This document shows positions 1 through 45,250 of a stretch of DNA of 64,000 bases, piece by piece (within the stretch, counting starts at the first letter, position 1; each line of letters starts with the position of its first letter). The notes beneath the pieces were generated by a model. That model did not search any database and had not been told where the DNA came from. It saw nothing but the letters and a program-made list of their open reading frames with translations. The DNA lies in the IMG/VR virus record IMGVR_UViG_3300037502_003770, positions 248,695 to 312,694 of that record. The stretch is one strand, 5' to 3'. Position numbers and translations under genes: made by a program.

Positions 1-2
1 TA

Positions 3-596
3 ATAAATTATATAGATACATCTGATAATAGATTTTTTGATAAGTCATTATTTTATAAAGAAAATGACGTTTTAAATGGAGAAGTTTATTTTTTTAATGA
101 AGATGATTATAGTTTTTCATTAGTTCAAGAACAATATTATTCAATAAAAAATAAAATACAAGATGATTTAATTAATGAAAATAAATATACAGCTTACACT
201 TATAATATAGTAAATAATAAAGTAGAAACTGAATTTGAATTTAAATATAAACCATTTTATCCAATAAATATTAGGAAGTTTTCAAATTATCTTGAAACAA
301 TTTATATATCAGGAATTAATAATACAATTATACCTGATTATAGTATTAAAAATGAAACATATTATCTATGGAGAGATTTATTGGATATTGGTTTTATTGA
401 ACAAGATGAAAATGATACTAACGGTGTAGATTACCCTTTTATAAATCAAAAACATTATTTATATAATAATATAAATATACAAGTACTACCTGATTTGTCA
501 GATAGAAATACAATAATTTTATTTAAAGATTTACTTAGTAATAAAACTATTACAAAAGAAATTAATGAACTTAACATAGGTAATTTTATATGTTAA
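3..596 (+). CDS. Virion structural protein, 5'-truncated by the window edge
   Basis: Frame is open from position 3 to the stop at 596; the track's 381 start is an internal TTG. Ends ...YLWRDLLDIGFIE...GVDYPFINQKHY, in a structural gene neighbourhood. Confidence 0.6.
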   Translation: MNYIDTSDNRFFDKSLFYKENDVLNGEVYFFNEDDYSFSLVQEQYYSIKNKIQDDLINENKYTAYTYNIVNNKVETEFEFKYKPFYPINIRKFSNYLETIYISGINNTIIPDYSIKNETYYLWRDLLDIGFIEQDENDTNGVDYPFINQKHYLYNNINIQVLPDLSDRNTIILFKDLLSNKTITKEINELNIGNFIC

Positions 597-1381
597 AATT
601 AAAAGATAAAAATAAAGTAATTAACTTTACATTAACTAAAAAAAATGAAAAAGTATCTTCTAAAGAAGATTATAATTCTTATATAAATAAAGTTTCAGAA
701 GAAAATATTATATTTCCAAAAGATGAAGAAATTACATTATTTTATCCTGAAGATAATTTTAATATTATACCATTTTATAAAACAAACAATAGTGATTTTT
801 TATCATTTAATACATACACTTCAATATTATATAATGAAAATGAATTAAAATATATTAATGATAATTTAAAGACTTCATATTATATTTTTTCAATATATGA
901 TAATTATGATAGTAATAACCAAAAATTATTAAATCAATTTAAAATTAATGCTGGTGAGAAAGGTACGTATAATATTGTTAATCAACTTATAACTCCTAGA
1001 TTAAAATATTTTAATAATCAAGGTTTAACTAAATCTTTTAATGTTTTACCTATACCAATAGATAAACTGAAAAATAACACTATTTATTTAAAAATAGTGT
1101 TTTTTAATTCAAAAAATGGTTTGTTTACTTATTTCAATAATAGTAGTCAAATTTTAACAACTGAGGAAAAAAATTATATAACAACAATAATTAATCCTAT
1201 AAATAAAACCTATACTTTTAATAGTAACACTATTGAAATTACCCAATCTTCTATTAAAGATAGTTTTATTTATGAAAATAATAAATTAAATACCAATAAG
1301 AATACTTTATCACCATTAAATGATTCTAATGATGATATTTCTTTTGGTATAGATAATATTTTAAAAAAATTCAAAATATGA
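590..1381 (+). CDS. Hypothetical protein, probably virion structural
   Basis: 263-aa ORF overlapping the previous stop; Asn/Thr-rich; structural context. Confidence 0.55.
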   Translation: MLKLKDKNKVINFTLTKKNEKVSSKEDYNSYINKVSEENIIFPKDEEITLFYPEDNFNIIPFYKTNNSDFLSFNTYTSILYNENELKYINDNLKTSYYIFSIYDNYDSNNQKLLNQFKINAGEKGTYNIVNQLITPRLKYFNNQGLTKSFNVLPIPIDKLKNNTIYLKIVFFNSKNGLFTYFNNSSQILTTEEKNYITTIINPINKTYTFNSNTIEITQSSIKDSFIYENNKLNTNKNTLSPLNDSNDDISFGIDNILKKFKI

Positions 1382-1554
1382 TAGAAGCATTAAGTCTATT
1401 TTTTTTATTTATGTCCATTGTTAAAGTTATAGGGACATTATACTATATAGTTTACTCATTTATAAAGAAAGAACCTATATTCTTTGAAAAAGAAGAAGAA
1501 AGGTTAATGAACTGGTTTAGTTTTGCTTATATTCTAACATATATATTTTTTTAA
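1378..1554 (+). CDS. Small two-TM membrane protein (58 aa, missed by the ORF track)
   Basis: ATGA overlap with the previous stop; hand translation MIEALSLFFLFMSIVKVIGTLYYIVYSFIKKEPIFFEKEEERLMNWFSFAYILTYIFF has two hydrophobic segments. Confidence 0.6.
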   Translation: MIEALSLFFLFMSIVKVIGTLYYIVYSFIKKEPIFFEKEEERLMNWFSFAYILTYIFF

Positions 1555-1557
1555 TGT

Positions 1558-2046
1558 ATGGATATAGTAATTATTTTAGAATATCTTGTTTATTATGAAT
1601 CTAGGTCTGGGATAAAACAAATGCAAATAAATTTTCGTTTATTTAATAAATATCTCTATGATTATAGATATAATCTTTTAATGATGGATTTTATTAAGGT
1701 ATATTATTCTTGTAATATAAATGAATGGTTTAGAAAGATTATATCTAGTGATGATGAATATTATCTTTTATTAAAAGATATATTAGAAAAAAATATAGAA
1801 GTATTTAATTATTTACCTTATATTACAATATTTAATAACGATAAATTAATATGTAAACTTTTTAAATATAATACAAACCCTTTCAAAGATTTAAAAAAAC
1901 GTTATATAGAACATTTTATAAATAAAAATTCATATTCAAAATTACAATTTTTAAGAAATAAAGAAAGAATTATAAAAATATATAATGAAGGCGATAAATC
2001 TATTAAAGATTATCTACCTGAAAATTTTAAATATATTTTAGATTAA
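1558..2046 (+). CDS. Hypothetical protein with a YxE-leader-like N-terminus
   Basis: 162-aa ORF starting MDIVIILEYLVYYE, which fits the array leader pattern. Confidence 0.55.
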   Translation: MDIVIILEYLVYYESRSGIKQMQINFRLFNKYLYDYRYNLLMMDFIKVYYSCNINEWFRKIISSDDEYYLLLKDILEKNIEVFNYLPYITIFNNDKLICKLFKYNTNPFKDLKKRYIEHFINKNSYSKLQFLRNKERIIKIYNEGDKSIKDYLPENFKYILD

Positions 2047-2048
2047 AA

Positions 2049-2058
2049 ACTATTTATA
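2049..2058 (+). promoter_or_regulatory. Putative phage promoter motif ACTATTTATA
   Basis: Motif ends 19 nt before the ATG at 2077 and recurs before many genes. Confidence 0.6.
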
Positions 2059-2076
2059 TTTATAAGTTAAATATAA

Positions 2077-3195
2077 ATGGAAATCTTAGATAGGGAAAAA
2101 TTATTTAGACAAATTAGAGTTGAATGTATAGCTACGGCTAGACCAGCAGTTAATAAAGATTTAACAGACGATGTTATATTAACTCAAATTGAAATAGCTA
2201 TGGAAGATTACATGGCTTATATACAAAACTGGTTAACATTACAACAATGGTCTTCTTTGTCTAATTTAGATATATCGCAAGCTGACTTAGTTAATGCTTT
2301 TACAACTAAAACATTAGATTTTGAAAAAGAATTCGCAGCAGCTTTTGGAAAACAAACTGGTATAGGTGTTATAGGTGATTGGGAATTAAAAAAGGATTTT
2401 GTAACAATATCCGCAAATACTCAAAGTTATTTAATACCAGCTAATAGAGAAATAAATCAAGTTTTATGGGAAACACCGCCACAATTGGCAGGAAATATTA
2501 TAGACCCATTTACACCTAATTCTTGGGCAGCAGCCCCTTATGGTTGGAATGTTGGGGGTGTACCAGCATCAGCTTTATTACCTGCATTTTCTTTAATGCT
2601 TACTTCGCAAGATAGGATGCAAAAGAAAAAACTTTTACAAAGTGAATTAACTTATAAAATAAGTCCTGGACCTAACGGTACGAAAAGATTATTTTTATAT
2701 CCGATGCCTGGCGGTAGAGATGAAATGACTGGACCTGGTTTTGCATCTTTGAAAAGATTTGAAGGTTCTCAAGTATGGTATTGGTATTATGATACTAATA
2801 CTTTGGGTAGAGATAAATGTTTAGAAGAAAATAATGATATTATAATATTACCAACAGATGTACCTTTTAGAATTTTAAAATGGGAAAGATTAAATTCACC
2901 TACACAAAATAAAGTTAGAAGATTAGCTGTATCTTATTGTAAAAAATATGTTGGTATGGTTATGGGTTTATATTCAGGTAAAATATCAGCACCTAATAAC
3001 GATGATTTACAATTAGATTATAATATGTTTATTGAACAATCAGAAAAAGAAAAGGAAAAAATATTTGAAGAACTTAAAGAAGAACTTAAAGAATTAGATT
3101 ATACTAATATAATAAAAAAGAAAGCTGAAATGGCTGACAGTTTAAATACTGTATTAAAATATTCACCACCTCAACAACCATTCTATTTCTTTTAA
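2077..3195 (+). CDS. Neck / head-tail adaptor protein (T4 gp13-like)
   Basis: 372 aa; RLFLYPMP core, helical C-terminal half and PPxxPFYFF terminus resemble gp13-type neck proteins; a gp14-like gene lies nearby. Confidence 0.55.
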   Translation: MEILDREKLFRQIRVECIATARPAVNKDLTDDVILTQIEIAMEDYMAYIQNWLTLQQWSSLSNLDISQADLVNAFTTKTLDFEKEFAAAFGKQTGIGVIGDWELKKDFVTISANTQSYLIPANREINQVLWETPPQLAGNIIDPFTPNSWAAAPYGWNVGGVPASALLPAFSLMLTSQDRMQKKKLLQSELTYKISPGPNGTKRLFLYPMPGGRDEMTGPGFASLKRFEGSQVWYWYYDTNTLGRDKCLEENNDIIILPTDVPFRILKWERLNSPTQNKVRRLAVSYCKKYVGMVMGLYSGKISAPNNDDLQLDYNMFIEQSEKEKEKIFEELKEELKELDYTNIIKKKAEMADSLNTVLKYSPPQQPFYFF

Positions 3196-3233
3196 AATAA
3201 AAAATCTACTTTTATTAAGTAGATTTTTTATTT
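3195..3233. terminator. Bidirectional intrinsic terminator
   Basis: Perfect 17-bp inverted repeat AAATAAAAAATCTACTT / AAGTAGATTTTTTATTT with a 5-nt loop, between convergent genes. Confidence 0.85.
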
Positions 3234-3598
3234 GGTTGCATTTGTTTAATACTTTCTTGAATTTTCTTTCTTAATTCATCATCTAAAACTTCTAATTTCT
3301 TATTATCCTCATCTATTTCTTTAGAACTTAATTTACCATTGTTAATAGCTGTTACATATTGAATATGTAGTTTCATTAAATCCATCTGAAATTTAAAAAA
3401 TTGTTCTAAACTCTTTTGAGCATTGTTTCTAACGGTTTCAAATTGTATAATATCCGAATCATCCACCATCTTATCAATAGCTCTCCTGTAGTCTCTCTGT
3501 GCGTTATCAATCAACATATCAAGATGTCTATTGATTTCATTAAACCTCTTTTTTAAAGATTCGTCATTAAATTCAATTTCACTCTTTCTTCTTTGCAT
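3215..3598 (-). CDS. Hypothetical coiled-coil protein
   Basis: 127-aa charged helical ORF. Confidence 0.6.
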   Translation of the reverse strand: MQRRKSEIEFNDESLKKRFNEINRHLDMLIDNAQRDYRRAIDKMVDDSDIIQFETVRNNAQKSLEQFFKFQMDLMKLHIQYVTAINNGKLSSKEIDEDNKKLEVLDDELRKKIQESIKQMQPNKKST

Positions 3599-3603
3599 TT
3601 TAT

Positions 3604-4134
3604 TTAAAATATTATTAAACCTAATAATAATAAAGTTAAAACATTAGTTGTACCTAATATTATTATTCTATTATTTCTAGTTTTTATTTTTTTATCTTTA
3701 TCTTCTATAAGTAGTAATTTTTCATTAATAATTTTATCTTTATTTTGTAAAGATTTATTCATATTAGATATTTCACTATTTTGAACAGTAATTATTTCAT
3801 GATAGTTTTCAATTATATCATCTTTTTCTTTTATAACCTCTTTATATTTAGCAATAATTTCCTTATTAACTTTAATAGATTCTTTAAGTTTACTAATTAT
3901 ACTATCTTTTTTTTCTAACCTTAATAATAAATATTCAGCATTTTTCTTATTAAATAAATTCTCATTTTTTAAAACAGCTAAATCTCTTATTTGTTTAGTA
4001 TTAAACAAAAATATAGTGTCCTTTAAAATAAAAGGTACTTTGCTTTCATATCTAATTTCAGGTTTAATGCTTTGAGATAAACATATAAATGGAATCAATA
4101 GAAGCGTTATTAAGATAATATATATTTTTTTCAT
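3604..4134 (-). CDS. Signal peptide + coiled coil + C-terminal TM protein (spanin-like candidate)
   Basis: MKKIYIILITLLLIPFICLS|Q signal, long heptad region, hydrophobic C-terminus IIILGTTNVLTLLLLGLIIF. Confidence 0.55.
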   Translation of the reverse strand: MKKIYIILITLLLIPFICLSQSIKPEIRYESKVPFILKDTIFLFNTKQIRDLAVLKNENLFNKKNAEYLLLRLEKKDSIISKLKESIKVNKEIIAKYKEVIKEKDDIIENYHEIITVQNSEISNMNKSLQNKDKIINEKLLLIEDKDKKIKTRNNRIIILGTTNVLTLLLLGLIIF

Positions 4135-4477
4135 TTTTTTCTTTTATATTATTATTGATTTTATTTTCTAATATTTTATCATTATAATTTAAAGTATCAA
4201 TATCTTTATTTATTAAAGAATCTTTATATTCTAAAAGAGATATTTTATTATTTAAATAAATAATGTTTTTATCTAAAGAATCTATTACGTTATTTAATGA
4301 ATCTATTTTATAAATATTTTTATCCGTAAAATTATCTTCTACAAATTGTTTATTATTACTAATAATAAAATATAAAACAAAGTATGATAAAACAACTAAT
4401 GAAATATATATTACATTTTTAGGTATTTTATTATATTTGTCCGATAGGGTTTGCATTATTTTCTTCATTCTCTTCAC
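4064..4477 (-). CDS. N-terminal TM + coiled-coil protein (i-spanin-like candidate)
   Basis: TM VIYISLVVLSYFVLYFII followed by IDSL/LDKN heptads; overlaps the downstream gene. Confidence 0.5.
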   Translation of the reverse strand: MKRMKKIMQTLSDKYNKIPKNVIYISLVVLSYFVLYFIISNNKQFVEDNFTDKNIYKIDSLNNVIDSLDKNIIYLNNKISLLEYKDSLINKDIDTLNYNDKILENKINNNIKEKNEKNIYYLNNASIDSIYMFISKH

Positions 4478-4829
4478 CGTTTAACCATAAATCATAATAA
4501 GTATATATTTTTTCTATAACTTCTAATGATTCGTCTGTTAATTTTAAATTATCAGTTGTTAAAGTACAACCATCCATAAAATTATACTTGAATAAAATTT
4601 TATTATTTGAATCAACTGGAACATAAGCTTCTATAAATTTATTATCTTCCGTTTCTTCATACTTTATAAATTTAATTCTAGTTGAAATAGCTTTTTTAAA
4701 TTTATCTTGTATATCTTGTTGTATATCTAAATCAGCAGAGCTAACTTCTTCTTTAAGAAGATTAGTCTTACTTTTAAAATTTCTCATCTTGCTAACTAAA
4801 TCTTTAGTTGATAAGTTTCTATCTTTCAT
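4431..4829 (-). CDS. Hypothetical protein, possibly head-internal
   Basis: 132 aa; LLKEE motif near the N-terminus; preceded by a minus-strand ACTATTTATA. Confidence 0.55.
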   Translation of the reverse strand: MKDRNLSTKDLVSKMRNFKSKTNLLKEEVSSADLDIQQDIQDKFKKAISTRIKFIKYEETEDNKFIEAYVPVDSNNKILFKYNFMDGCTLTTDNLKLTDESLEVIEKIYTYYDLWLNGEENEENNANPIGQI

Positions 4830-4843
4830 AATAAAATGTTTTA

Positions 4844-4870
4844 TATAAATAGTAATTGTGAACTATTTAA
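4844..4870. promoter_or_regulatory. Divergent pair of promoter motifs
   Basis: Minus-strand ACTATTTATA at 4844-4853 (15 nt before the 4829 start) and plus-strand ACTATTTAA at 4862-4870 (20 nt before the ATG at 4890). Confidence 0.6.
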
Positions 4871-4889
4871 TAATATATTACATAATATT

Positions 4890-5420
4890 ATGAATAATAA
4901 ACAGAAAAAAATAATATCAACACCTACAGACCCATATAGATATTATGGAAATGAAGATTTTGAACATGATTTAGGTTATATTCAAGAATATTATAGTAGA
5001 GATGTTAGTACAAAAATAATACTTTACCAAATAGATACTGTTAAAACAAAAGTTAATCAACTTTATGGTGAAGCTAAAGCATACGATAAAAAAATATTAC
5101 CACCAATAGAATTAACAGCTATGATTGAAATTGGTGATATAAATTCAAAAAATTTAACAAGTACTGGTATTGTAGATGAAACTTATGATAGTTTTAAATT
5201 CTCTGTGTTTATAAATGAACTTAATGAAAAAAATGTTTCTATAAAAAGAGGTGATTTTATATTATATAACGATGGTACAGTATCTAATTTCTTTGAAATA
5301 AATAAAGTATCAAATATATTATCAAAGAACACAATAGGAGGTTTAAAACCATATTTCTTCTCTTGTGAAGCTATACTTCAAACAAATAACGTATTACCTA
5401 AAGAATTAAAGATTGTTTAA
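4890..5420 (+). CDS. Neck / head-closure protein (T4 gp14-like)
   Basis: NQLYGEAKAYDKKILPPIEL and IKRGDFILY...FFEINKV patterns of gp14-type proteins. Start moved from 4836 to the ATG at 4890, downstream of the promoter motif. Confidence 0.55.
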   Translation: MNNKQKKIISTPTDPYRYYGNEDFEHDLGYIQEYYSRDVSTKIILYQIDTVKTKVNQLYGEAKAYDKKILPPIELTAMIEIGDINSKNLTSTGIVDETYDSFKFSVFINELNEKNVSIKRGDFILYNDGTVSNFFEINKVSNILSKNTIGGLKPYFFSCEAILQTNNVLPKELKIV

Positions 5421-5423
5421 TAA

Positions 5424-5666
5424 TTATAATAATCGATAATAAATAATTTTATAATTATTATTAGTATGTATTTTATTCTTACTATATAGAGTAACCCATT
5501 CATAATATATATCTTTTTTACTTCTATTTAAATCAGACTTTAAACAAAGACAAAAATCTACATGATTAAATATATTAGCAGGGTTGTCAGTACCATCCAT
5601 ATTATTATCAATAATATATAAACTTTCTCTATAATAAGTTGTATTTATTTGTATTTCTATTTTCAT
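5424..5666 (-). CDS. YxE-leader array member (80 aa)
   Basis: Leader MKIEIQINTTYYRE. Confidence 0.75.
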   Translation of the reverse strand: MKIEIQINTTYYRESLYIIDNNMDGTDNPANIFNHVDFCLCLKSDLNRSKKDIYYEWVTLYSKNKIHTNNNYKIIYYRLL

Positions 5667-5671
5667 ATTTT

Positions 5672-5857
5672 TTAGTAATAAGGTTTGTTTAATACATCTT
5701 CAAAACATACATGAGCTTCATTAATAAATGGAATGAAAATAGTAAATTGATAGTTTACAACATGTATACTTTTAATAATAACTAATGATTCGATACAACC
5801 ATTTAAAAATAAATATTCATAATAAAAATTATTATTAATTCTAATTAATATTTTCAT
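5672..5857 (-). CDS. YxE-leader array member (61 aa)
   Basis: Leader MKILIRINNNFYYE. Confidence 0.75.
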   Translation of the reverse strand: MKILIRINNNFYYEYLFLNGCIESLVIIKSIHVVNYQFTIFIPFINEAHVCFEDVLNKPYY

Positions 5858-5863
5858 AATTTT

Positions 5864-6064
5864 TTATTTACCATAATCACGATAGTATTTTACTATATTA
5901 TATTTACCAGGAAAAAAACAAAATTTATTTTCAAAATACTGATAAAATAACCAATCAATAAATTTAAGAAACCTACAATTATATCTTATATCAAAAGAAA
6001 ATTCTAAAACAGAATAAAGAAATTCACGATATATAATATGTGTTAAAGTAATATTTATATTCAT
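5864..6064 (-). CDS. YxE-leader array member (66 aa)
   Basis: Leader MNINITLTHIIYRE. Confidence 0.75.
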   Translation of the reverse strand: MNINITLTHIIYREFLYSVLEFSFDIRYNCRFLKFIDWLFYQYFENKFCFFPGKYNIVKYYRDYGK

Positions 6065-6070
6065 AATTTT

Positions 6071-6274
6071 TTATTCGTGATAAGAATAATAAGTATTAAC
6101 AACTATTCTATCTTTTAAGGTAGAATTTTTAAATAATAAAATACTATGATATTTGTTTGTTTTGTTATAAAAATGAATTTTTATATATGAACCAATAAAT
6201 GAATTTATAATATCGTTGTCAATATATATTTCTTTATATTCAAGAAAATAATCAATGTAAATAAATATTTCCAT
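6071..6274 (-). CDS. YxE-leader array member (67 aa)
   Basis: Leader MEIFIYIDYFLEYKE. Confidence 0.75.
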   Translation of the reverse strand: MEIFIYIDYFLEYKEIYIDNDIINSFIGSYIKIHFYNKTNKYHSILLFKNSTLKDRIVVNTYYSYHE

Positions 6275-6276
6275 AA

Positions 6277-6462
6277 TTAGAAACTATAATATTTATTACG
6301 ATTTTTACTAGGATATTTAATCATATAAGAATAAATTAAAGAAAATTCATTTAAAATTTTATTATCACTTTTTATTTCACATATAATATATGATATATTA
6401 GTATAATAATAACATTCAAAATATTTTACATGTATATTATATAAATCAATTAATATTCGCAT
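6277..6462 (-). CDS. YxE-leader array member (61 aa)
   Basis: Leader MRILIDLYNIHVKYFE. Confidence 0.7.
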   Translation of the reverse strand: MRILIDLYNIHVKYFECYYYTNISYIICEIKSDNKILNEFSLIYSYMIKYPSKNRNKYYSF

Positions 6463-6685
6463 AAATATTATAATATTTACTGTGGTAACGTAAAAATATA
6501 AAATAACTAAAATAATAGTTATCTGATAGTAAATCAGGGAATTCTAATTCATCTTTAATAAGAAAGAAATCATCTATAGTATTTATTTTTAATAAATTGA
6601 TAATTACTATAATTTGATTATCATTTCCATTAAATAAATTTTCAAAATAAGTTATAATATTTTCTATTTTAATTAATATTTCCAT
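6446..6685 (-). CDS. YxE-leader array member (79 aa)
   Basis: Leader MEILIKIENIITYFE. Confidence 0.75.
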   Translation of the reverse strand: MEILIKIENIITYFENLFNGNDNQIIVIINLLKINTIDDFFLIKDELEFPDLLSDNYYFSYFIFLRYHSKYYNIYANIN

Positions 6686-6688
6686 AGT

Positions 6689-6886
6689 TTAATAAAATTT
6701 ATACTGTTCATCATGTAAACTAAAATATATTTTATTATCGTTTTCCCAATTATATATTATATAGTTAATATAATATTCTTTTCTTAGACGAGTTAAAGGA
6801 TATAATATTAAATTAGAATTAAATAGAAATCCTGTATCAGAGTTCTCCCTATAATAAGAATTATACGTTTCTATTTCTATTTCCAT
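6689..6886 (-). CDS. YxE-leader array member (65 aa)
   Basis: Leader MEIEIETYNSYYRE; paralog of the adjacent gene. Confidence 0.8.
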   Translation of the reverse strand: MEIEIETYNSYYRENSDTGFLFNSNLILYPLTRLRKEYYINYIIYNWENDNKIYFSLHDEQYKFY

Positions 6887-7073
6887 AGTTTAATAGTATT
6901 TATATTCTTTATTATGAGTCGAAAAATATATCTTACCATCATTTCTCCAATTATTATATATGATATATTTCTTTAATATTAAAGATAATTTTAAAATAGA
7001 TTTAAATTTATATTCTTTGTCAGAGCTATATTCCTTATAATAAGAATTATACGTTTCTATTTCTATTTCCATA
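6850..7073. repeat. 38-bp direct repeat covering two array gene starts
   Basis: TATAATAAGAATTATACGTTTCTATTTCTATTTCCATA is identical at 6850-6887 and 7036-7073 (186-bp period). Confidence 0.9.
6890..7072 (-). CDS. YxE-leader array member (60 aa)
   Basis: Leader MEIEIETYNSYYKE. Confidence 0.8.
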   Translation of the reverse strand: MEIEIETYNSYYKEYSSDKEYKFKSILKLSLILKKYIIYNNWRNDGKIYFSTHNKEYKYY

Positions 7074-7847
7074 ATTACTAAAATACTGATATATTTCCAC
7101 TTTTGTTAAATAAGGACTTGTAATAAATGATTTTCCTTTAGTAAGGTCTTCATTTTCAAATACATCTTTTATATAAGAAAGATTATTTTTATCAAAAACT
7201 AAGACTTTATAAATCATATTATGTTTATCAGGTGTAGTTATTTTACCAACATTGCTTCCACGTCTAATAATAGAAAAATCGTATTCTAAAGAATCATAAT
7301 TTTTATCACGTTTATCAAATAATTTAAATAAATCACTTTTATTAGAAGTATTGCTTTTGTTTAATAAACCGTTCTTTGGTCTAATATAAATATTAAAACA
7401 ACAATGAAGTTTTCTACTATCAGAAAAATTTACTATTCCTAAATCAATACTTTCAACTAAATCAAAATCAAATAAAGTATTTGTATTATTTAATTGAGTG
7501 ATTGGTAAAATAAAACCTACTACATCAGATATTTTAACTGATTTTTTAAAAAAACTTCTAGCTAAATTATTTCTTTCACCAAAAGGAGGGTTTCCTATAA
7601 TTAATCTACCTTTTTGATAATCAATACCTAATTTAAGAAAATCAGCTTTTATAATAGAATCATCTTCAGGTTCAATATCGTAACCAATACAATCAGGTAT
7701 TAATTTTAGAAAAGAACCATTTCCAGCAGAAGGTTCTATTACTTGAGAAATTTCAATATTATGTAAATTACATATTTCATATATTTTATTTATACAAAAT
7801 TGAGCTGTTTCTTGAGGAGTATAGTACTTGTCGTTTTCTATTTTCAT
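7047..7847 (-). CDS. Amino (N6-A/N4-C) DNA methyltransferase
   Basis: DKYYTP, SAM-binding VIEPSAGNGSF and catalytic IGNPPF motifs. Confidence 0.85.
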   Translation of the reverse strand: MKIENDKYYTPQETAQFCINKIYEICNLHNIEISQVIEPSAGNGSFLKLIPDCIGYDIEPEDDSIIKADFLKLGIDYQKGRLIIGNPPFGERNNLARSFFKKSVKISDVVGFILPITQLNNTNTLFDFDLVESIDLGIVNFSDSRKLHCCFNIYIRPKNGLLNKSNTSNKSDLFKLFDKRDKNYDSLEYDFSIIRRGSNVGKITTPDKHNMIYKVLVFDKNNLSYIKDVFENEDLTKGKSFITSPYLTKVEIYQYFSNYGNRNRNV

Positions 7848-8053
7848 AATATTTGTGAATTAATGAATCTACTGTATTTTGCAATTTTGTTTATAATAAA
7901 ATTAATATTTCTATAAAATTTAATATTTGTTTCACTATGATATAATCTATTATATTGAATAAGCATTGTAAATGAAAATCTATAATTTTTAAAGATACTT
8001 AAATTATCTATTTCAAAATAAGTAAAGTTTTCAGTTTTAATACTTAAAATCAT
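7844..8053 (-). CDS. YxE-leader array member (69 aa)
   Basis: Leader MILSIKTENFTYFE. Confidence 0.75.
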   Translation of the reverse strand: MILSIKTENFTYFEIDNLSIFKNYRFSFTMLIQYNRLYHSETNIKFYRNINFIINKIAKYSRFINSQIL

Positions 8054-8304
8054 TTTATTTTATATGAACGAAGTGTTTTTAATATTTCATCATCTATTAA
8101 TTTAGTAGTTTCATATGATATGAGTTTTGACATGAAAGTTTCTATATTATTAGTTTCATAATAAAAAGTTTTAGAATCAATATGATTTATACTATTTTCT
8201 TCAATATAAACAGTATATTCTAAATCTAATTTTATTAAAGTAATACTAATTTCAAAAGAATTTTCTTTATAAGAAAAATTATTTGTTTTGATTAAAATTT
8301 TCAT
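8050..8304 (-). CDS. YxE-leader array member (84 aa)
   Basis: Leader MKILIKTNNFSYKE. Confidence 0.8.
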   Translation of the reverse strand: MKILIKTNNFSYKENSFEISITLIKLDLEYTVYIEENSINHIDSKTFYYETNNIETFMSKLISYETTKLIDDEILKTLRSYKIK

Positions 8305-8569
8305 TTGTTAACATATTTAAATTAAAATTTAAAGGTACTTCACTAATAAATGAAGGTACTTTTATATTTATTGTACATAGGTGAAAATGGCTTTCATAAT
8401 AAGTTGTTTTTTTAGAAAAACTAACAACATTATAGTAATAATTATTATCAAAATATAATCTTATTATTAAACTAGGTAAATGAATAAAAGCACCAATATC
8501 ATAATTAGAATTTTCATAATCAAAATTTTCTATATAAGAAAAATTATTTATTTTAATTTGTAATTTCAT
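8279..8569 (-). CDS. YxE-leader array member (96 aa)
   Basis: Leader MKLQIKINNFSYIE. Confidence 0.8.
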   Translation of the reverse strand: MKLQIKINNFSYIENFDYENSNYDIGAFIHLPSLIIRLYFDNNYYYNVVSFSKKTTYYESHFHLCTINIKVPSFISEVPLNFNLNMLTNENFNQNK

Positions 8570-8741
8570 GATTTAAATAATATTTATTTTTTCTATTATT
8601 ATGTAATAAAGTATCCTTTTCATAATATAATCTTATATAATCATATTCAGGTAAAAATATAATTCTACAATAAATGTAATAATATTTAAAATCATAATCT
8701 TCACTATATTCAAAATTTTCTAAAGTAATTAAAATCAACAT
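8553..8741 (-). CDS. YxE-leader array member (62 aa)
   Basis: Leader MLILITLENFEYSE. Confidence 0.75.
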   Translation of the reverse strand: MLILITLENFEYSEDYDFKYYYIYCRIIFLPEYDYIRLYYEKDTLLHNNRKNKYYLNHEITN

Positions 8742-8745
8742 AATT

Positions 8746-8937
8746 CTAAAGTTTATAATATTTTATATTTTGTAAATCAAATATTAGTTTAGATTTAAAA
8801 ATATTATAATAAGATTTATCATCAATAAAATTTAATAAATTTATAGTAAATTTTATAATTGTAGAACTACCATGTACTAGACGTTCACAATAAAATTTAT
8901 AATTATCAAACATTACTCTAATATTAATATTTTCCAT
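8746..8937 (-). CDS. YxE-leader array member, divergent
   Basis: The internal ATG at 8937 gives MENINIRVMFDNYKFYCE; the track start at 8973 lies deeper inside the ATP-grasp gene. Confidence 0.6.
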   Translation of the reverse strand: MENINIRVMFDNYKFYCERLVHGSSTIIKFTINLLNFIDDKSYYNIFKSKLIFDLQNIKYYKL

Positions 8938-9706
8938 CAATAACTTGTTTAAATCTTTTATAATAGTTTTCAAAAAAATTCATATTATCAAAACCATAAG
9001 TACCTGTACCAAAAATATCATTTATTTCAATTAAAGATGTTTTACCATTTTTAAGTACTGCAAAATCTAATGTATATAATTCAGGAGTTTTATTATAAGT
9101 AATATTACTAAAATCTTGAATACATTCCATAACTAATTTTTTATCAAGAAAATAATTATTATCATTTAATGTATCACCAAGATATAATTTAACTGATAAA
9201 ATTTCATTCTTATGAATCCATAATCTATATTCTGATAATATATCAATATGTGTTGAATATAAAAACGGTACTGAAGATTCGATATTACTATCAACTAGTA
9301 AATTAAATTGTCTTTCATTTTCAATAAATGAACCATTAAATAATTTAGTCATGTTTAAAGGTTTTACAAAAATACCTTCATTATGTTCTTTGATTAATTT
9401 ATCAAAACTGTTTATATTTCCAAGAATTAATTTTCTTTCAAAAAACTTCTCATTCATATAAATCATTTGATTTGTTAAAGAATAAGTTTCTTCAATATTA
9501 TAATATTCTTTAAGTTTTTGAAAACAATATTCAACGCTACCAGAAAAAATATCACCTTCTTGAAAGGAAGATTCATCTGTTGTGTATTCAATATTTGTTT
9601 TGTTCCACCAATTATATTTTTTAATTGAGGAAATTAAATCAAAAGTATGTTGATAGAGCGGTAATCCGTCTTCATCTTTTTGATATATAAGTTTAATATT
9701 TTTCAT
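8924..9706 (-). CDS. ATP-grasp domain protein (DUF4343 / R2K-like)
   Basis: IFVKP, SEYRLWI and YTLDFAV...LIEIND..GTGTYG motifs typical of this ATP-grasp family. Confidence 0.8.
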   Translation of the reverse strand: MKNIKLIYQKDEDGLPLYQHTFDLISSIKKYNWWNKTNIEYTTDESSFQEGDIFSGSVEYCFQKLKEYYNIEETYSLTNQMIYMNEKFFERKLILGNINSFDKLIKEHNEGIFVKPLNMTKLFNGSFIENERQFNLLVDSNIESSVPFLYSTHIDILSEYRLWIHKNEILSVKLYLGDTLNDNNYFLDKKLVMECIQDFSNITYNKTPELYTLDFAVLKNGKTSLIEINDIFGTGTYGFDNMNFFENYYKRFKQVIDGKY

Positions 9707-9914
9707 TAAATATATTAGGATTAAGTTTTAGTTGTAAATTAAACAACCTCCACATATCATATTCTTCATAATAATTATATTCGGACCAAATATGTGAAAT
9801 AGTACCATCAGTAAAATAAAAATCTAATTTTAACGGTAAAAATCTACCTTCTAATTTAATTGTAAAATCTATTTCTGAATAAGTGATGTGATTTGTTTTA
9901 ATTATTATATTCAT
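9693..9914 (-). CDS. YxE-leader array member (73 aa)
   Basis: Leader MNIIIKTNHITYSE. Confidence 0.8.
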   Translation of the reverse strand: MNIIIKTNHITYSEIDFTIKLEGRFLPLKLDFYFTDGTISHIWSEYNYYEEYDMWRLFNLQLKLNPNIFNEKY

Positions 9915-10189
9915 TAGAAACTGTTTTTATTATAAAAATTACAAGTATGAAAATTTTTAGAACTAAATATTAGTACAATATCATTAAATATATCCATATA
10001 TATAAACATTGTATTATATTTATAAAGAAAATCATTATCTTTAATATTAAATCCTATACAAGTAAGAAATTTACCATACGAAGTACTATAACTTTCAAGA
10101 TAATTTACAGATTCTTCATATAGTATATTATTAATTGTAATTTGTAAAATAATATATCTACCTGTTTTTTTATTAAAAATACCAGCCAT
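9914..10189 (-). CDS. YxE-leader array member with N-terminal extension (91 aa)
   Basis: MAGIFNKKTGRY followed by IILQITINNILYEE. Confidence 0.7.
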   Translation of the reverse strand: MAGIFNKKTGRYIILQITINNILYEESVNYLESYSTSYGKFLTCIGFNIKDNDFLYKYNTMFIYMDIFNDIVLIFSSKNFHTCNFYNKNSF

Positions 10190-10201
10190 AAAAAAATTTT
10201 A

Positions 10202-10471
10202 TTAAGTTAGTTGATTATAGTTGTAGTAATAATTATTTCCGTAATCTAAATAATAGTAAAATTGATTAAATCTAATAATTATATCTAATTCAATATATTC
10301 TCTATTTTTATCAATAGTTTTATTATTAAGATTATAAATATGATTATTATGATAATAATCAGATGGAAAAGTAAATAATTCTTTATAAAAGTCGATTTTA
10401 TAAAGAAAGAAATAAGAATCTACTAATTCTTTATATTCAAAAAAATCATTTGCTATATATAAGTTATTCAT
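10202..10471 (-). CDS. YxE-leader array member (89 aa)
   Basis: Leader MNNLYIANDFFEYKE. Confidence 0.7.
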   Translation of the reverse strand: MNNLYIANDFFEYKELVDSYFFLYKIDFYKELFTFPSDYYHNNHIYNLNNKTIDKNREYIELDIIIRFNQFYYYLDYGNNYYYNYNQLT

Positions 10472-10688
10472 AATATTTAAATTTTAAAATTTTATAACCA
10501 AAAGTACTAATATTAAGAATATCATGATTATCTGATATAGTTGAATTATCTATATCAAATGCTAATCTATTTTTATATTGTAAATCATTTACTGATAATA
10601 AAATACCAGCATGTATAAATCTATTAAAAATTATACCTGTAGTTTCCTTATAAAGAAAGTTATCAGATAGTTTAATTATTATTTCCAT
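10464..10688 (-). CDS. YxE-leader array member (74 aa)
   Basis: Leader MEIIIKLSDNFLYKE. Confidence 0.75.
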   Translation of the reverse strand: MEIIIKLSDNFLYKETTGIIFNRFIHAGILLSVNDLQYKNRLAFDIDNSTISDNHDILNISTFGYKILKFKYYE

Positions 10689-10945
10689 AAAAAATCAATT
10701 TTATCTTTAAAAGTAACATATTCAGAATTGTAATAATCATAAGATTTATGCTGTGTAATTAAATAATTATATTCATAAATAAAATTATGTTCATTTAAAA
10801 TATTACAAGTAATACCCTTATCAACACATTCAATAAAATTAAAATTGAAATATTCTTGTACTTCATACTTATTTAAGTAAACAAGATTAAAAGAATCACG
10901 TCTTTCAACATAGTTTATTTTATTTAAATAAAGTTTTATTTCCAT
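10679..10945 (-). CDS. YxE-leader array member (88 aa)
   Basis: Leader MEIKLYLNKINYVE. Confidence 0.75.
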   Translation of the reverse strand: MEIKLYLNKINYVERRDSFNLVYLNKYEVQEYFNFNFIECVDKGITCNILNEHNFIYEYNYLITQHKSYDYYNSEYVTFKDKIDFLWK

Positions 10946-10953
10946 AAAATATT

Positions 10954-11142
10954 TTAGTTATAATAATTAAACTTTTCATAATCGAATAAATCAAATTTTA
11001 TACAATTATAAGACCTTGATTTAAATACGAACTTTTCGGTGGTATCAAATGATAATAAGTATATTATTTTGTAATGTAAAAAAATACCAATACTTGAATT
11101 TTCAGTATAATTGATTTCTAAAAGTTCAATTGAAATTAACAT
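10954..11142 (-). CDS. YxE-leader array member (62 aa)
   Basis: Leader MLISIELLEINYTE. Confidence 0.75.
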   Translation of the reverse strand: MLISIELLEINYTENSSIGIFLHYKIIYLLSFDTTEKFVFKSRSYNCIKFDLFDYEKFNYYN

Positions 11143-11387
11143 AATTGATAAAAATTAAATTGAATATCTTTACGACCATCATAATCACCATCTTTAATTA
11201 CAGAATCAATATAAGATTGAATATAATAAGATTGATTAAAACTATTATAATCAAAAACAAAAATATATTCTTCTGTGATAATAGACCTTGATATTTTAAA
11301 AGATAAATAAAGTCGAGATTCTATTCTATATTTAGAACAACGTTCAATATATTCATAATTATTTGTTTTTATATCTATTTCTAACAT
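11136..11387 (-). CDS. YxE-leader array member (83 aa)
   Basis: Leader MLEIDIKTNNYEYIE. Confidence 0.8.
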   Translation of the reverse strand: MLEIDIKTNNYEYIERCSKYRIESRLYLSFKISRSIITEEYIFVFDYNSFNQSYYIQSYIDSVIKDGDYDGRKDIQFNFYQLC

Positions 11388-11388
11388 A

Positions 11389-13233
11389 TTACTTTTTATA
11401 AATTTCTTTAAATTTATTAATTACTTCAGCAAGTACACTACTATTAGAATTATCTATATAATCAATATTATCTACAACTTTGTTAATAACTTTAAGTTTA
11501 TTATTAATAATTTCATAAATTGTCTCATCAATTGTTTCACTAAACAAAAATATAAATACATTTGTATGTTCTTTTTGTCCAGACCTATGTATTCTAGCAT
11601 AACATTGTTCATTTTCGGCAGGAACATAGCTTTGTGATAACATAAACATATTCTTTGCTTTAGTTAAAGTAATACCTGCGTTACCAGCCCCAACTGTTAA
11701 TAATAAATTTTGTATAGTATTATTATCTCCTTGAAAAATATCAACAATATCTTGTCTTGTATCGGACTTTATATCACCAGTATATAATTCACTATTATTA
11801 AGAATGGTTTTAAGTTCTTTTAATGAAGATTTATAACAATCAAATATTAAAACTTTTTCATTTTCTTCATTTAAACGTTCAATATATTCTACTAAATATT
11901 TAGATTTTAATTTTGATGTATATTGTCTTAATTCGGTTAAGATTGTTAACGGTGTTTTTTGTTTTTCATTTAAAGAAATATTCATATTACCATTTTTATC
12001 TTCTTTATAATCACTTAAATTATCCCAATTAGCATCTTTAAATCCACTTTCTATTCTTTTATATTCAGCTTCTTCTGAAGGTGTTAATTCTAAATAAATC
12101 TTATTTATTGTTAAAGGAGGTAATTCTTTAAGAACATCTTCTTTTTTTACACGAAACATTATCTTTGATAATTTTTCATATATCATATCAAATTTAATAT
12201 TATCATTTATTTGTACGTATGTATTAATCTTATTATTAAAGAACATACCACAATATTCAGTATAGAATTTATTTTTACTTTTAAATTCTATCGGTCTTAA
12301 TAATTTAAGTAAATTATATAATTCTTGTACTCTATTTGGAACTGGAGTACCTGTTAATAACATAAGATTTGTATTACTTAAAGATTTCTTAAAACTTTTA
12401 GTAAAATTCTTAAACATTTGTGTTTTAGAATTCTTTAATTTATGTGCTTCATCAAAAATAATACTATCAACATTAGATAAACCTAAACTTGTTATTTTTT
12501 TATTAACATCAAAATTTCTTGAAAAATACTCATAGTTAGTAATAATATATTTACTTTCTTCTAAAGAATAACAATTTAACTTAGATTTTGAATTTAAAAC
12601 AAAAGCTTTTGAATTTGTAAAGTGATGTATTTCTTTAAGCCAATTAAGTTTTAAAGAACTAGGTACTATAACTAAAACTTTTTTACTTTGATTGATTTCT
12701 GATGCTAATATAGCTAATAATGTTTTACCAGTACCTAAATCGGCAGCTATTAAACTATTTTTTAAATGATTAGCAAATAATGCACCTTTTATTTGGTGAT
12801 TATATGGTTTCACACCTTCTTTTAAATATTTAGAATAATCAAACTTTTCCGAAACTTCATCTAATGATTGTAAAAACGTATTTAGATTAGAATCTATTGT
12901 TGCAATAATTTCTTTGTTTTTATCTTCCTTAATTTTTTTTCTCTTATAGAAATCTAATTTTGAAGAAAAAACTTCTTTATCTTCACTATTTACAAAAGAA
13001 AAAAATATATCTTTCCTTGATTTATATTCAGATATTAAACAATATAAATTATATCCGTTAAGATGCCAAGTCTTATCAGAAGGGTTATATTTTTTATCAT
13101 CAAGTTTTTTTATATTAAAAACAAGCTCTTCATTATAAAATGACTTTAATGAAAAGGTCTTTTTATCCGAAAGGAGAGTTATGTTTACTTTAAAAATTTC
13201 AGTTGCCGTATGTATATTTGTATTTTCAAACAT
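11389..13233 (-). CDS. SNF2-family helicase/translocase
   Basis: ADLGTGKT (motif I), IIFDEAHKLKN (DEAH), LLTGTP and QCYARIHRSGQ (motif VI). Confidence 0.92.
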   Translation of the reverse strand: MFENTNIHTATEIFKVNITLLSDKKTFSLKSFYNEELVFNIKKLDDKKYNPSDKTWHLNGYNLYCLISEYKSRKDIFFSFVNSEDKEVFSSKLDFYKRKKIKEDKNKEIIATIDSNLNTFLQSLDEVSEKFDYSKYLKEGVKPYNHQIKGALFANHLKNSLIAADLGTGKTLLAILASEINQSKKVLVIVPSSLKLNWLKEIHHFTNSKAFVLNSKSKLNCYSLEESKYIITNYEYFSRNFDVNKKITSLGLSNVDSIIFDEAHKLKNSKTQMFKNFTKSFKKSLSNTNLMLLTGTPVPNRVQELYNLLKLLRPIEFKSKNKFYTEYCGMFFNNKINTYVQINDNIKFDMIYEKLSKIMFRVKKEDVLKELPPLTINKIYLELTPSEEAEYKRIESGFKDANWDNLSDYKEDKNGNMNISLNEKQKTPLTILTELRQYTSKLKSKYLVEYIERLNEENEKVLIFDCYKSSLKELKTILNNSELYTGDIKSDTRQDIVDIFQGDNNTIQNLLLTVGAGNAGITLTKAKNMFMLSQSYVPAENEQCYARIHRSGQKEHTNVFIFLFSETIDETIYEIINNKLKVINKVVDNIDYIDNSNSSVLAEVINKFKEIYKK

Positions 13234-13343
13234 ATAAATATAGATTGTTAATGTGGTATATATTTTTATAATTCTTTTTTGTTAAAAAATTTTAACATTT
13301 TAAATATTAAGTTTTACTAGCAGTAAATTAAGAAGAAAATAGT

Positions 13344-14339: not shown

Positions 14340-14367
14340 AACTTTTGGGAAAATACGGAAACCATAC

Positions 14368-14408
14368 TATACAGCGTAGCTGTATATAATATATAGACTG
14401 CAAGTCTA
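14368..14408. other. Two tandem GNA-triloop hairpins
   Basis: TATACAGC-GTA-GCTGTATA (14368-14386) and TAGACT-GCA-AGTCTA (14394-14408). Confidence 0.75.
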
Positions 14409-14505
14409 ACCGATAGGAAAGAGAAAAAGAATATTTACTAAGAATAGCTGTCTTTTAAGAATAATTATATATATTCTATAGTAGAAATCTATTTATTATA
14501 AAATA

Positions 14506-14515
14506 ACTATTTATT
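14506..14515 (+). promoter_or_regulatory. Promoter motif variant ACTATTTATT
   Basis: 25 nt before the ATG of the baseplate operon. Confidence 0.5.
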
Positions 14516-44962: not shown

Positions 44963-45250
44963 ATGGAAATATCAATTAAAACTAATAATATTACTTATTT
45001 TGAATCAAATAATGTTCATAATATTATTAAATGTTATTTTAGTAATCTTTATCTGATTTATGAATTAGAAATTCTTAAAGATAAGGATTACTTTTTAAGA
45101 ATAAAATTTGAAGATTATGATTGTTTCCTTTCTATTAAAAGAAATTTATTAGAATATAGATATATTAGTATTAAAGATTTTAATATATTATCTATTGGTA
45201 CATACTTAAAAAATCCTCAGCACACAAAATACGAAAAACTTATTAAATAA
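44963..45250 (+). CDS. Orphan YxE-leader family member (95 aa)
   Basis: Leader MEISIKTNNITYFE, a near-consensus match, 33 kb from the array. Confidence 0.75.
   Translation: MEISIKTNNITYFESNNVHNIIKCYFSNLYLIYELEILKDKDYFLRIKFEDYDCFLSIKRNLLEYRYISIKDFNILSIGTYLKNPQHTKYEKLIK

What the first reader, a model, noticed from the sequence alone, without database searches (positions are those of the whole stretch)
6689..7073. Array caught expanding: recent tandem duplication with an identical 38-bp leader and diverging body
Seen: adjacent members 6689-6886 and 6890-7072 share an identical 38-bp block over the start codon and leader (6850-6887 = 7036-7073). Their C-termini are still alignable (YIIYNWENDNKIYFSLHDEQYKFY vs YIIYNNWRNDGKIYFSTHNKEYKYY) while the middles differ. 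A second pair shares TATAAGAAAAATTATTT over the leader (8268-8284 and 8533-8549). Inference: the array grows by duplication, and leader-encoding DNA provides microhomology for recombination that swaps or deletes payloads (an accordion-like cassette system).
Basis: partly seen in the sequence, partly recalled or inferred. Interest (0 to 1): 0.6.

Follow-up and report, generated by a model that had tools for sequence, protein, structure and literature searches.

The report
Old paralogue pair in phage gene array
The two neighbouring mini-genes are real but old duplicates in a fast-changing array of a small-protein family that makes up about a fifth of the genes of a T4-like giant phage. Close relatives differ by whole members, and the changes start and end at the conserved gene ends.

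Summary
Window 6850-6887 equals 7036-7073 (38 nt; chance gives about 15). The two minus-strand ORFs, A (6890-7072) and B (6689-6886), are tandem paralogues.

The claim of a recent duplication, caught expanding, fails. Behind the leader A and B differ at 42% of synonymous sites, against about 10% between this phage and a sister phage (L007/L008) that lacks B. So B predates that split. It was most likely lost in the sister by unequal crossover in the 18-nt stop/start junction repeat.

The leader's identity comes from protein-level constraint: pN is 0.03 in the leader and 0.29 in the body.

The pair belongs to an ORFan family of about 89 proteins (19% of ORFs) in a 313-kb T4-like jumbo phage. Members share an N-terminal M-x-I-x-I..Y-x-E motif, modelled as a beta hairpin, and a C-terminal YY. 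Their middles are hypervariable.

Array content varies among relatives:
- B is present or absent.
- The terminal member is replaced.
- One allele diverges right behind its leader.
- A 613-bp stretch is missing in another population.
- A more distant relative shares only the motif.

Turnover at the conserved gene ends is supported. Function is unknown; a repertoire of host-interaction proteins is inferred.

The parts
6890..7072 (-). Copy A, a 60-aa family member. It has an orthologue in the sister phage (L007 3205-3387, 92% aa identity).
6689..6886 (-). Copy B, a 65-aa family member and tandem paralogue of A. It is absent from the sister phage contigs L007 and L008.
7036..7073 (-). 38-nt block identical to 6850-6887 (leader of A, codons 1-12). 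Positions 7047-7072 also encode the 3' end of the methyltransferase-like gene in another frame.
6850..6887 (-). 38-nt block identical to 7036-7073 (leader of B).
6878..6895 (-). 18-nt junction repeat (last codon, stop, 3-nt spacer, ATG, two codons) between A and B. It is one arm of the inferred unequal crossover.
6677..6694 (-). The same 18-nt junction repeat between B and the next member; the other arm.
5424..11387 (-). Array of 20 tightly packed small ORFs (60-96 aa) of the N-motif/YY family, interrupted by two enzyme genes. Spacers range from overlaps to about 10 nt. There are no terminator-like sites.
5424..5666 (-). Terminal member (80 aa). The sister phage has a different 64-aa member here (29% aa identity) between near-identical flanks.
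8050..8304 (-). Member with a hyper-divergent allele in the sister phage (61% aa identity, pS 0.24). There is 1 difference in the first 64 nt, then about 22% divergence almost to the stop.
10341..10953 (-). 613 bp (two members and the first 44 codons of a third) absent from a contig of run X2, where 15 other letters stand instead.
   Evidence: record 3, joint 10340/10954, side 255
7047..7847 (-). DNA methyltransferase-like gene (266 aa) inside the array. The more distant relative R2 has a 122-aa ORF at this place and no 266-aa ORF.
   Evidence: (phrog_5172 2e-33, phrog_799 5e-14)
8924..9706 (-). ATP-grasp enzyme of the R2K clade (260 aa) inside the array. It is conserved at 98% (sister) and 75% (R2) aa identity.
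   Evidence: (PF18299 5e-26)
11389..13233 (-). SNF2-type helicase, the first gene of the leftward gene string that holds the array.
1558..2046 (+). 162-aa protein with the same N-terminal motif, one of about 22 longer motif carriers in the genome.
44963..45250 (+). Solitary 95-aa family member elsewhere in the window.

Best explanation
A and B are the youngest surviving pair of tandem duplicates in a birth-and-death array of a lineage-specific small-protein family of a T4-like jumbo phage.

Shown:
- The window is the last 64 kb of a 312,694-bp virus record (22% GC) with a T4 gp21-type prohead protease and a gp23-type capsid protein.
- About 89 of about 457 ORFs begin with M-x-I-x-I-(3-5 residues)-Y-x-E. 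Most of the small ones end with YY within a few residues of the C-terminus.
- The small ORFs are under purifying selection.
- Once the first 16 residues are removed, most members have no detectable similarity to each other. Those that do are mostly neighbours.
- Close relatives differ by whole members, and these changes begin or end at the conserved gene ends.

Inferred:
- Arrays grow by tandem duplication. The middle of the protein then diverges quickly (pN/pS about 1.4 in the middle of A versus B), while the N-terminal hairpin and the C-terminal strand are held by selection.
- The conserved tail, stop, ATG and leader make a quasi-repeat of about 45-70 nt at every junction. Homologous recombination, including recombination between co-infecting relatives, misaligns there and deletes, duplicates or swaps members.
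- B was lost from the sister phage this way. B was not newly made in this phage.
- The proteins are most likely a variable repertoire of early host-interaction or anti-defence binders. The conserved ends form the scaffold and the middle forms the variable surface. This last point is the weakest step.
For: Identity of the genome: PF03420, 96.8 bits; PF07068, 197.8 bits.

Family and census:
- HMM of the 20 array members.
- 67 of 278 small ORFs carry the motif, against 6.7 +/- 2.4 in shuffles; 26 of 266 larger ORFs, against 4.9.
- 89 curated members, 19% of ORFs and 8.3% of the genome; Y in 85 of 89.
- Y and E are invariant in the alignments.

Real genes: summed over 12 small orthologue pairs, pS is 0.077 and pN 0.025, ratio 0.33, binomial P 2e-6.

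Tandem origin: only 30 of 89 bodies have a paralogue above the 99th percentile of shuffled controls; of all 89 members, 17 have an adjacent gene as best hit.

Age of A and B: pS 0.42 against about 0.10 for orthologues.

B is absent in two independent contigs, which keep an A-type body with a B-type last codon pair. The indel lies where divergence from the sister phage changes from about 1% (6431-6688) to about 3.5% (6890-10280), P 0.02.

Other turnover.

Structure: AlphaFold2 with 56 paralogues gives an all-beta meander, with pLDDT 85-90 for residues 1-20 as the first hairpin.
Against: - Polarity of the B indel rests on divergence levels and flank patterns, not on an outgroup. The DNA of the more distant relative R2 could not be fetched.
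- Only four structural differences were seen, and their ends are known only to within 10-30 nt.
- The structure model is of middling confidence (mean pLDDT 70) and matches no known fold.
- There is no expression or function data. The family has no relatives outside this phage group among 1.84 billion representatives, so the functional inference rests on context and analogy.
Confidence: 0.68

Rival explanations
1. One reading: B is a fresh tandem duplicate of A made in this phage's lineage after it split from the sister phage. The leader is still identical because too little time has passed.
For: B is present here and absent in the sister phage. A is B's best and only detectable paralogue. The 38-nt identity is the longest repeat in the region.
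Against: - Synonymous divergence behind the leader is 0.42, against 0.10-0.14 between orthologues (P 0.0005-0.004).
- Three indels separate A and B.
- Where A differs from its orthologue, B agrees sometimes with one and sometimes with the other. That is expected of an older split.
- The sister's copy carries B's last codons.
Confidence: 0.07
2. B, or the A-B unit, was imported into this phage from another related phage by recombination at the conserved junctions, so the sister phage shows the older state.
For: The region is a recombination mosaic. There are blocks of 0%, about 1%, 3.5%, 7.6% and 22% divergence within 5 kb, and one whole member is swapped.
Against: - The sister's single copy ends with B-type letters, which a deletion by unequal crossover explains directly.
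- No other source of B was found in the protein searches.
- R2 lists eight small ORFs behind the place of the methyltransferase, as here, against seven in the sister. Only their lengths are known.
Confidence: 0.17
3. The 38-nt identity is kept by gene conversion between the leaders of A and B (concerted evolution), which would make the leader an active recombination site.
For: - A and B are identical over 38 nt, while A differs from its own orthologue at 2 of these sites.
- Zero synonymous change has P about 0.05.
- The leader match is the best among tandem pairs: 40 of 42, against 30-37 of 42 in most other pairs and 16-24 of 42 in four pairs with offset leaders.
Against: - Both differences in the sister are G to A, the direction of the AT mutation pressure, so they are simply derived there.
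- Synonymous rates of leader and body do not differ significantly (P 0.37).
- A's leader is also constrained by the overlapping methyltransferase frame.
Confidence: 0.15
4. The N-terminal motif is a detachable signal, not a fold element. It would be a T4-like capsid targeting sequence cut after the invariant Glu by the gp21-type prohead protease, so the family would be a large set of packaged, ejected proteins.
For: - The phage has a gp21-type protease.
- In T-even phages the diverse internal proteins share only a conserved N-terminal targeting sequence (PMC3012670).
- The motif ends in an invariant Glu and heads proteins of 56-266 aa with unrelated bodies.
Against: - The model puts the motif into the sheet, with the highest confidence of the chain.
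- The conserved C-terminal YY is not explained.
- The P3 residue is an invariant Tyr, while the likely capsid-protein site of this phage reads L-x-E (inference).
- The bodies are aromatic-rich with mixed charge.
- 89 cargo species would be without precedent.
Confidence: 0.1
5. The small proteins are leader-bearing precursor peptides modified by the ATP-grasp enzyme in the array (RiPP-like).
For: An ATP-grasp gene sits in the array in all three relatives.
Against: - The enzyme is of the R2K clade (PF18299/PF14243), not a graspetide ligase.
- There is one enzyme for 89 dispersed genes.
- Behind the leader there is no conserved core with Ser/Thr/Lys and Asp/Glu.
- Members are predicted to be folded beta proteins.
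Confidence: 0.03

Closest known systems
Hyperplastic regions of T4-type phages, with modular shuffling at PeSL cassettes (Arbiol et al. 2010, PMC2839356; Comeau et al. 2014, PMC4122927)
   Same: - A T4-like phage.
- Blocks of small non-essential ORFans.
- Near-identical relatives differ by insertion, deletion and replacement of single ORFs.
- These events are bounded by short conserved repeats between the ORFs.
   Different: - There are no promoter/stem-loop cassettes here. No terminator-like sites were found, promoter-like sites are at chance level, and spacers range from overlaps to about 10 nt.
- The repeat is the coding tail and leader of the genes themselves.
- The ORFs belong to one family instead of being unrelated.
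T-even internal proteins with a shared capsid targeting sequence (review PMC3012670)
   Same: A short conserved N-terminal stretch ending in Glu heads otherwise very diverse small proteins, in a phage with a gp21-type protease. The internal proteins are counter-defence proteins.
   Different: - The motif here is 14-15 residues, predicted as a beta hairpin packed into the fold.
- P3 is Tyr.
- There is a second conserved motif at the C-terminus.
- There are about 89 carriers.
- Neither packaging nor cleavage has been tested.
Segmental amplification ('accordion') in T4 and T6 through short homologies (Srikant et al. 2022, doi 10.1101/2022.04.14.488369; PMC13096335)
   Same: Tandem copy-number change of small accessory genes through recombination at short flanking homologies in T4-like phages.
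   Different: Those amplifications are fresh arrays of identical units under acute selection. Here the copies are old and diverged (pS 0.42), and no copy-number variation of identical units was seen.

Membership tests
Genomic accordion (fresh segmental amplification) | Tandem units that are identical or nearly so over their whole length | tested here: not met
   A and B are identical over only 38 nt. Behind that, pS is 0.42 and pN 0.29, and there are three indels.
Genomic accordion (fresh segmental amplification) | Copy number varies among close relatives or within a population | tested here: met
   B is absent in L007 and L008. 613 bp are absent in a contig of run X2. Only contigs were available, not reads.
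PeSL-mediated modular shuffling (T4-type hyperplastic regions) | Promoter plus stem-loop terminator cassettes between the ORFs | tested here: not met
   0 terminator-like sites. 124 promoter-like sites against 105 +/- 9 in shuffles. Spacers range from overlaps to about 10 nt.
PeSL-mediated modular shuffling (T4-type hyperplastic regions) | Indels and replacements between close relatives are bounded by the repeated element | tested here: met
   The ends of the four events lie mostly in the tail/stop/start/leader zone. The repeat here is coding.
T4-type CTS-bearing internal proteins | A conserved N-terminal stretch of about 10 residues ending in Glu on otherwise unrelated proteins | tested here: met
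   The motif is found in 89 proteins. 59 of 89 bodies have no detectable paralogue.
T4-type CTS-bearing internal proteins | Cleavage at (L/I)-x-E by a gp21-type protease | tested here: inconclusive
   The protease gene is present, but the motif reads Y-x-E. Cleavage cannot be tested with these tools.
T4-type CTS-bearing internal proteins | Packaged in the head and ejected with the DNA | not testable with these tools
   This needs virion proteomics.
Graspetide-type RiPP precursors | A dedicated graspetide ATP-grasp ligase and a conserved core with ester- or amide-forming residues | tested here: not met
   The ATP-grasp is of the R2K clade. No conserved core follows the leader.
Any described protein family (Pfam, PHROGs, solved or predicted folds) | A significant sequence or fold match | tested here: not met
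   - Pfam and PHROGs: nothing below E 0.006.
- Word search and 1.84-billion-protein profile search: only own and sister-phage proteins.
- Foldseek PDB and BFVD: best E 0.3 or worse.
- VIA-align: top Z 5.9.
- ESM Atlas: 0.86.

The most novel reading that the evidence does not exclude
The invariant N-terminal M-x-I-x-I..Y-x-E stretch is a transferable address tag. It would be a beta-hairpin counterpart of the T4 capsid targeting sequence, recognised by the scaffold and cut by the gp21-type protease. This jumbo phage would then load its head with dozens of hypervariable small effector proteins. The DNA encoding the tag would double as the recombination site that shuffles them.
Probability: 0.1. 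Interest if true: 0.8.

Novelty: new variant of a known kind. Interest (0 to 1): 0.5.

Why it matters
Single-gene turnover in the accessory regions of T4-like phages is known, but it has been tied to regulatory cassettes between unrelated ORFans. Here one family supplies both the genes and the recombination substrate. Its conserved coding ends form the junction repeats, and it has grown to about a fifth of the gene count of a 313-kb phage.

The locus allows a test on natural variation: do conserved protein termini guide cassette exchange? It also offers a set of about 89 small proteins with a fixed frame and a free middle. These are candidates for a phage-encoded repertoire of binders against host defences.

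For the scan itself, a perfect repeat over a start codon in very AT-rich DNA can be the mark of a constrained N-terminus and need not mark a recent event.

Tried and rejected
- Megablast of the array against 50,697 phage records: no match.
- Pattern and protein scans found nothing usable: viral contigs for the ATP-grasp, its R2 homologue and the 38-nt leader; metagenome contigs for the R2 homologue and the leader. The family alignment was too variable to make patterns.
- DNA of the 14-kb contig of the more distant relative R2 could not be fetched. The R1 record is not held for the genome search. The outgroup test was therefore not possible.
- Read laying returned only Logan contigs. All joints except 10340/10954 have sides of about 21 nt in low-complexity DNA and were discarded as noise. 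Coverage of the A/B place in runs X2-X5 could not be read from the pieces listed.
- Complex prediction of the gp21-type protease with a family member: no verdict (score 0.01). This is not evidence either way.
- Fold searches and the ESM Atlas gave only generic beta sheets or chance-level scores. A weak Pfam Glyoxalase_2 hit (E 0.03) and weak PHROG hits (E 0.006 and weaker) were rejected as noise.
- The idea that the ORFs are not genes was rejected by pN/pS.
- A script that held two typed protein strings came back unrun. I repeated it with the stored ids P0016 and P0017.
- No alternative genetic code was needed; the frames are open under table 11.

Full report
**Where the window lies.** The window is bases 248,695-312,694 of a 312,694-bp virus record (IMG/VR; CheckV completeness 96%; GC 22%). 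It comes from JGI metagenome 3300037502. The run most likely to be its source is labelled a subsurface metagenome. The genome encodes a T4 gp21-type prohead protease (PF03420, 96.8 bits), a gp23-type major capsid protein (PF07068, 197.8 bits) and an acidic scaffold-like protein between them. It is therefore a distant T4-like jumbo phage.

**The observation.**
- The 38-nt identity (6850-6887 = 7036-7073) is real. It is far longer than chance allows in this AT-rich DNA: the longest exact repeat in Markov simulations was 15.5 +/- 1.2 nt, maximum 19.
- The block covers the base before the ATG, codons 1-12 and the first base of codon 13 of two adjacent minus-strand ORFs, A (6890-7072, 60 aa) and B (6689-6886, 65 aa).
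- Their C-terminal thirds align and their middles do not.
- The 17-nt match of the second pair is present too. It is of chance length and is meaningful only because of its position.
- An 18-nt block spans the last codon, stop, spacer, ATG and two codons. It is repeated at the A/B junction (6878-6895) and the B/next junction (6677-6694).

**What the pair belongs to.**
- From 5424 to 11387 the minus strand carries 20 tightly packed ORFs of 60-96 aa. They are interrupted by a DNA-methyltransferase-like gene (7047-7847) and an R2K-clade ATP-grasp gene (8924-9706). An SNF2 helicase gene (11389-13233) precedes them.
- All 20 start with a variant of M-x-I-x-I, then 3-5 residues, then Y-x-E. Most end with YY close to the C-terminus. 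Y and E are invariant in the alignments.
- An HMM and a motif census find the same signature across the genome. It occurs in 67 of 278 ORFs of 45-110 aa (shuffles give 6.7 +/- 2.4) and in 26 of 266 longer ORFs (shuffles give 4.9).
- After curation there are 89 carriers. That is 19% of about 457 non-overlapping ORFs and 8.3% of the DNA. They lie in arrays at about 20-38, 64-76, 86-90, 99-104, 121-122, 208-211 and 254-260 kb.
- With the first 16 residues removed, only 30 of 89 have a paralogue scoring above the 99th percentile of shuffled controls; of all 89 members, 17 have an adjacent gene as best hit. A/B is the only such pair in the window's array.
- The bodies are rich in Tyr and Phe (21% aromatic, against 12% in other ORFs) and have mixed charge.

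**The ORFs are genes.** A sister phage was found through a 62%-identical homologue of ORF 8050-8304. Two independent contigs, L007 (ENA, 51 kb) and L008 (JGI, 11 kb), are identical to each other over the array. They are colinear with the window at 92.5-99% DNA identity over the aligned stretches. Summed over 12 small orthologue pairs, pS is 0.077 and pN 0.025. The ratio is 0.33, with binomial P 2e-6 against neutrality.

**The age of the pair.**
- Behind codon 14, A and B differ at pS 0.42 and pN 0.29, with three indels. Orthologues of the window and the sister phage differ at pS 0.10-0.14.
- Nine or more synonymous differences in 22 sites since that split has P 0.0005-0.004. The A/B split is therefore several times older than the split of the two phages.
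- Split by region: the leader has pN 0.03. The middle has pN 0.39 against pS 0.27, a ratio of about 1.4. The C-terminal third has pN 0.21 against pS 0.60.
- Non-synonymous divergence differs strongly between leader and body (Fisher P 0.0005). Synonymous divergence does not (P 0.37). With only about 5.5 synonymous sites in 12 codons, zero change has P about 0.05.
- Other tandem pairs in the genome have leader identities of 30-37 of 42 nt, and four with offset leaders only 16-24 of 42; A/B has 40 of 42.
- The identical block is thus mainly the footprint of a constrained N-terminus in the youngest surviving pair. It is helped by the AT-biased codon choice. For A it is also helped by the overlap with the methyltransferase frame (7047-7072).

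**Copy B is polymorphic.**
- Both sister contigs carry a single copy. It is orthologous to A over its body (92% aa identity) but ends with B's last codon pair. It is followed directly by the next member.
- The indel lies where divergence between the two phages changes. Divergence is about 1% in 6431-6688 and zero in 5739-6285, against about 3.5% in 6890-10280 (P 0.02).
- The simplest reading is one unequal crossover between the two 18-nt junction repeats and the similar tails before them, during exchange between related genomes. It removed B from the sister's ancestor and brought in a right flank like the window's.
- Import of B into this lineage is the main alternative. The outgroup that would decide could not be fetched.

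**Other turnover.**
1. The terminal member 5424-5666 is replaced in the sister phage by another family member (29% aa identity). The flanks are near-identical, and homology ends at the start codon and near the stop.
2. Member 8050-8304 has 1 difference in its first 64 nt. It then shows about 22% divergence, with raised pS (0.24), until about 25 nt before the stop. This looks like a body exchanged with a more distant allele, with the ends of the exchange behind the leader and before the tail.
3. A 2,236-nt contig of run X2 (aquatic metagenome, about 96% identical) runs from 8529 to 10340 and continues at 10954, with 15 other letters between. It therefore lacks two members and the first 44 codons of a third. 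One end is the stop codon of 10954-11142. The 15 letters supply a new ATG in frame with codon 45 of 10202-10471, whose first half itself looks like a complete member.
4. A more distant relative, R2, has an ATP-grasp 75% identical to the window's. It keeps the synteny but lists other ORF lengths and has a 122-aa ORF in place of the 266-aa methyltransferase. Its two small ORFs that could be read (P0016, P0017) keep the motif and the YY tail but have no detectable orthologue in this genome.

By my reading, 6 to 7 of the 8 ends of events fall within about 30 nt of a start codon, a zone that is about 29% of the array (P about 0.01). This rests on few events with imprecise ends and is only suggestive.

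**What the proteins are.**
- No Pfam or PHROG family matches.
- The word-based search and a profile search of 1.84 billion representatives return only proteins of this phage and its sister.
- AlphaFold2 with 56 paralogues gives an all-beta meander for member 10464-10688, with mean pLDDT 70. Residues 1-20 score 85-90 and form the first hairpin. A first model made with 20 sequences agrees.
- Foldseek, VIA-align and the ESM Atlas give no specific match.
- I read the family as small beta proteins whose first hairpin and last strand are the fixed frame and whose middle is free to vary.
- Three things fit an accessory host-interaction or counter-defence repertoire: the methyltransferase, an R2K ATP-grasp and an SNF2 helicase stand in the same gene string, there is no internal terminator, and turnover is very fast. 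This is inference by analogy with the T4 hyperplastic regions and internal proteins (PMC2839356, PMC3012670).

**Comparison with known systems.** The dynamics resemble the modular shuffling of T4-type hyperplastic regions (PMC2839356, PMC4122927). The defining promoter/terminator cassettes are absent, however, and the repeat is the coding end of the genes. The locus is not a fresh accordion of the kind selected in T4 (doi 10.1101/2022.04.14.488369), because the units are old and diverged. The pattern of a conserved N-terminus with a diverse body recalls the T-even capsid targeting sequence, and a gp21-type protease is present. Against that reading:
- the motif is modelled as part of the fold;
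- P3 is Tyr, whereas the likely capsid-protein site reads L-x-E;
- the C-terminal motix is left unexplained.

I keep the targeting-tag reading as the novel case, at about 10%.

**Verdict.** The sequence observation is confirmed. It is wrong on timing and on which repeat recombined. The wider finding is a very large ORFan family with fixed ends in a T4-like jumbo phage. I rate it a new variant of a known kind and of moderate interest.

Noticed in passing
window 10202-10471 (-): The 89-aa ORF looks like a fusion of two family members. Residues 1-44 have the N-motif and end in a tail-like DYY stretch. In run X2's contig the second half starts its own ORF behind 15 other letters.
   Followed up: partly
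window 7047-7072: The methyltransferase-like gene overlaps copy A's leader by 26 nt in another frame, so this leader is dual-coding. Several other array members overlap their neighbours by 4-26 nt.
   Followed up: partly
window 49607-52060 (+): A cluster of five tRNA genes (Asn, Met, Glu, Asp and one with an odd anticodon call by ARAGORN). Rfam confirms all five as tRNA.
   Followed up: no
L012 2352-2856, 5803-6758, 8939-9759: A distant phage whose ATP-grasp is 36% identical carries another tandem family of small proteins. They have a conserved C-terminal YYRE-(Q/E)-KLKELLD stretch and a K-G-D-R-like N-terminus. Two members directly follow the ATP-grasp gene.
   Followed up: no
L007 position 1 (about window 10280); L008 position 4 (about window 9824): Both sister-phage contigs end inside the array, close to the joint at 10340 in run X2. 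Assemblies break in the most variable part, which hints at heterogeneity within populations.
   Followed up: no
window 5400-11400, upstream of all array start codons: There is no purine-rich Shine-Dalgarno-like stretch before any of the 19 start codons. The 30 nt upstream are A/T only, ending mostly in AATT or AAAT. The host may start translation without Shine-Dalgarno pairing.
   Followed up: no
window 17542-22152 (+): A 1,536-aa ORF with a lytic transglycosylase (SLT) domain near residue 1,340. Most other large ORFs in window 1-17,233 have no Pfam match.
   Followed up: no
window 5739-6285 versus L007: 547 nt with no difference from the sister phage lie next to a 145-nt patch with 11 differences (6286-6430). 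This is a recombination mosaic at the scale of single genes.
   Followed up: partly
genome 64153-66327, 99370-100741, 102005-104457, 208026-210709 (outside the window): There are arrays of longer motif carriers (84-189 aa) with a sharper form of the motif (M-x-I-x-I-F-N-x-N-F-x-Y-x-E). Within these arrays neighbours are still recognisably similar.
   Followed up: partly
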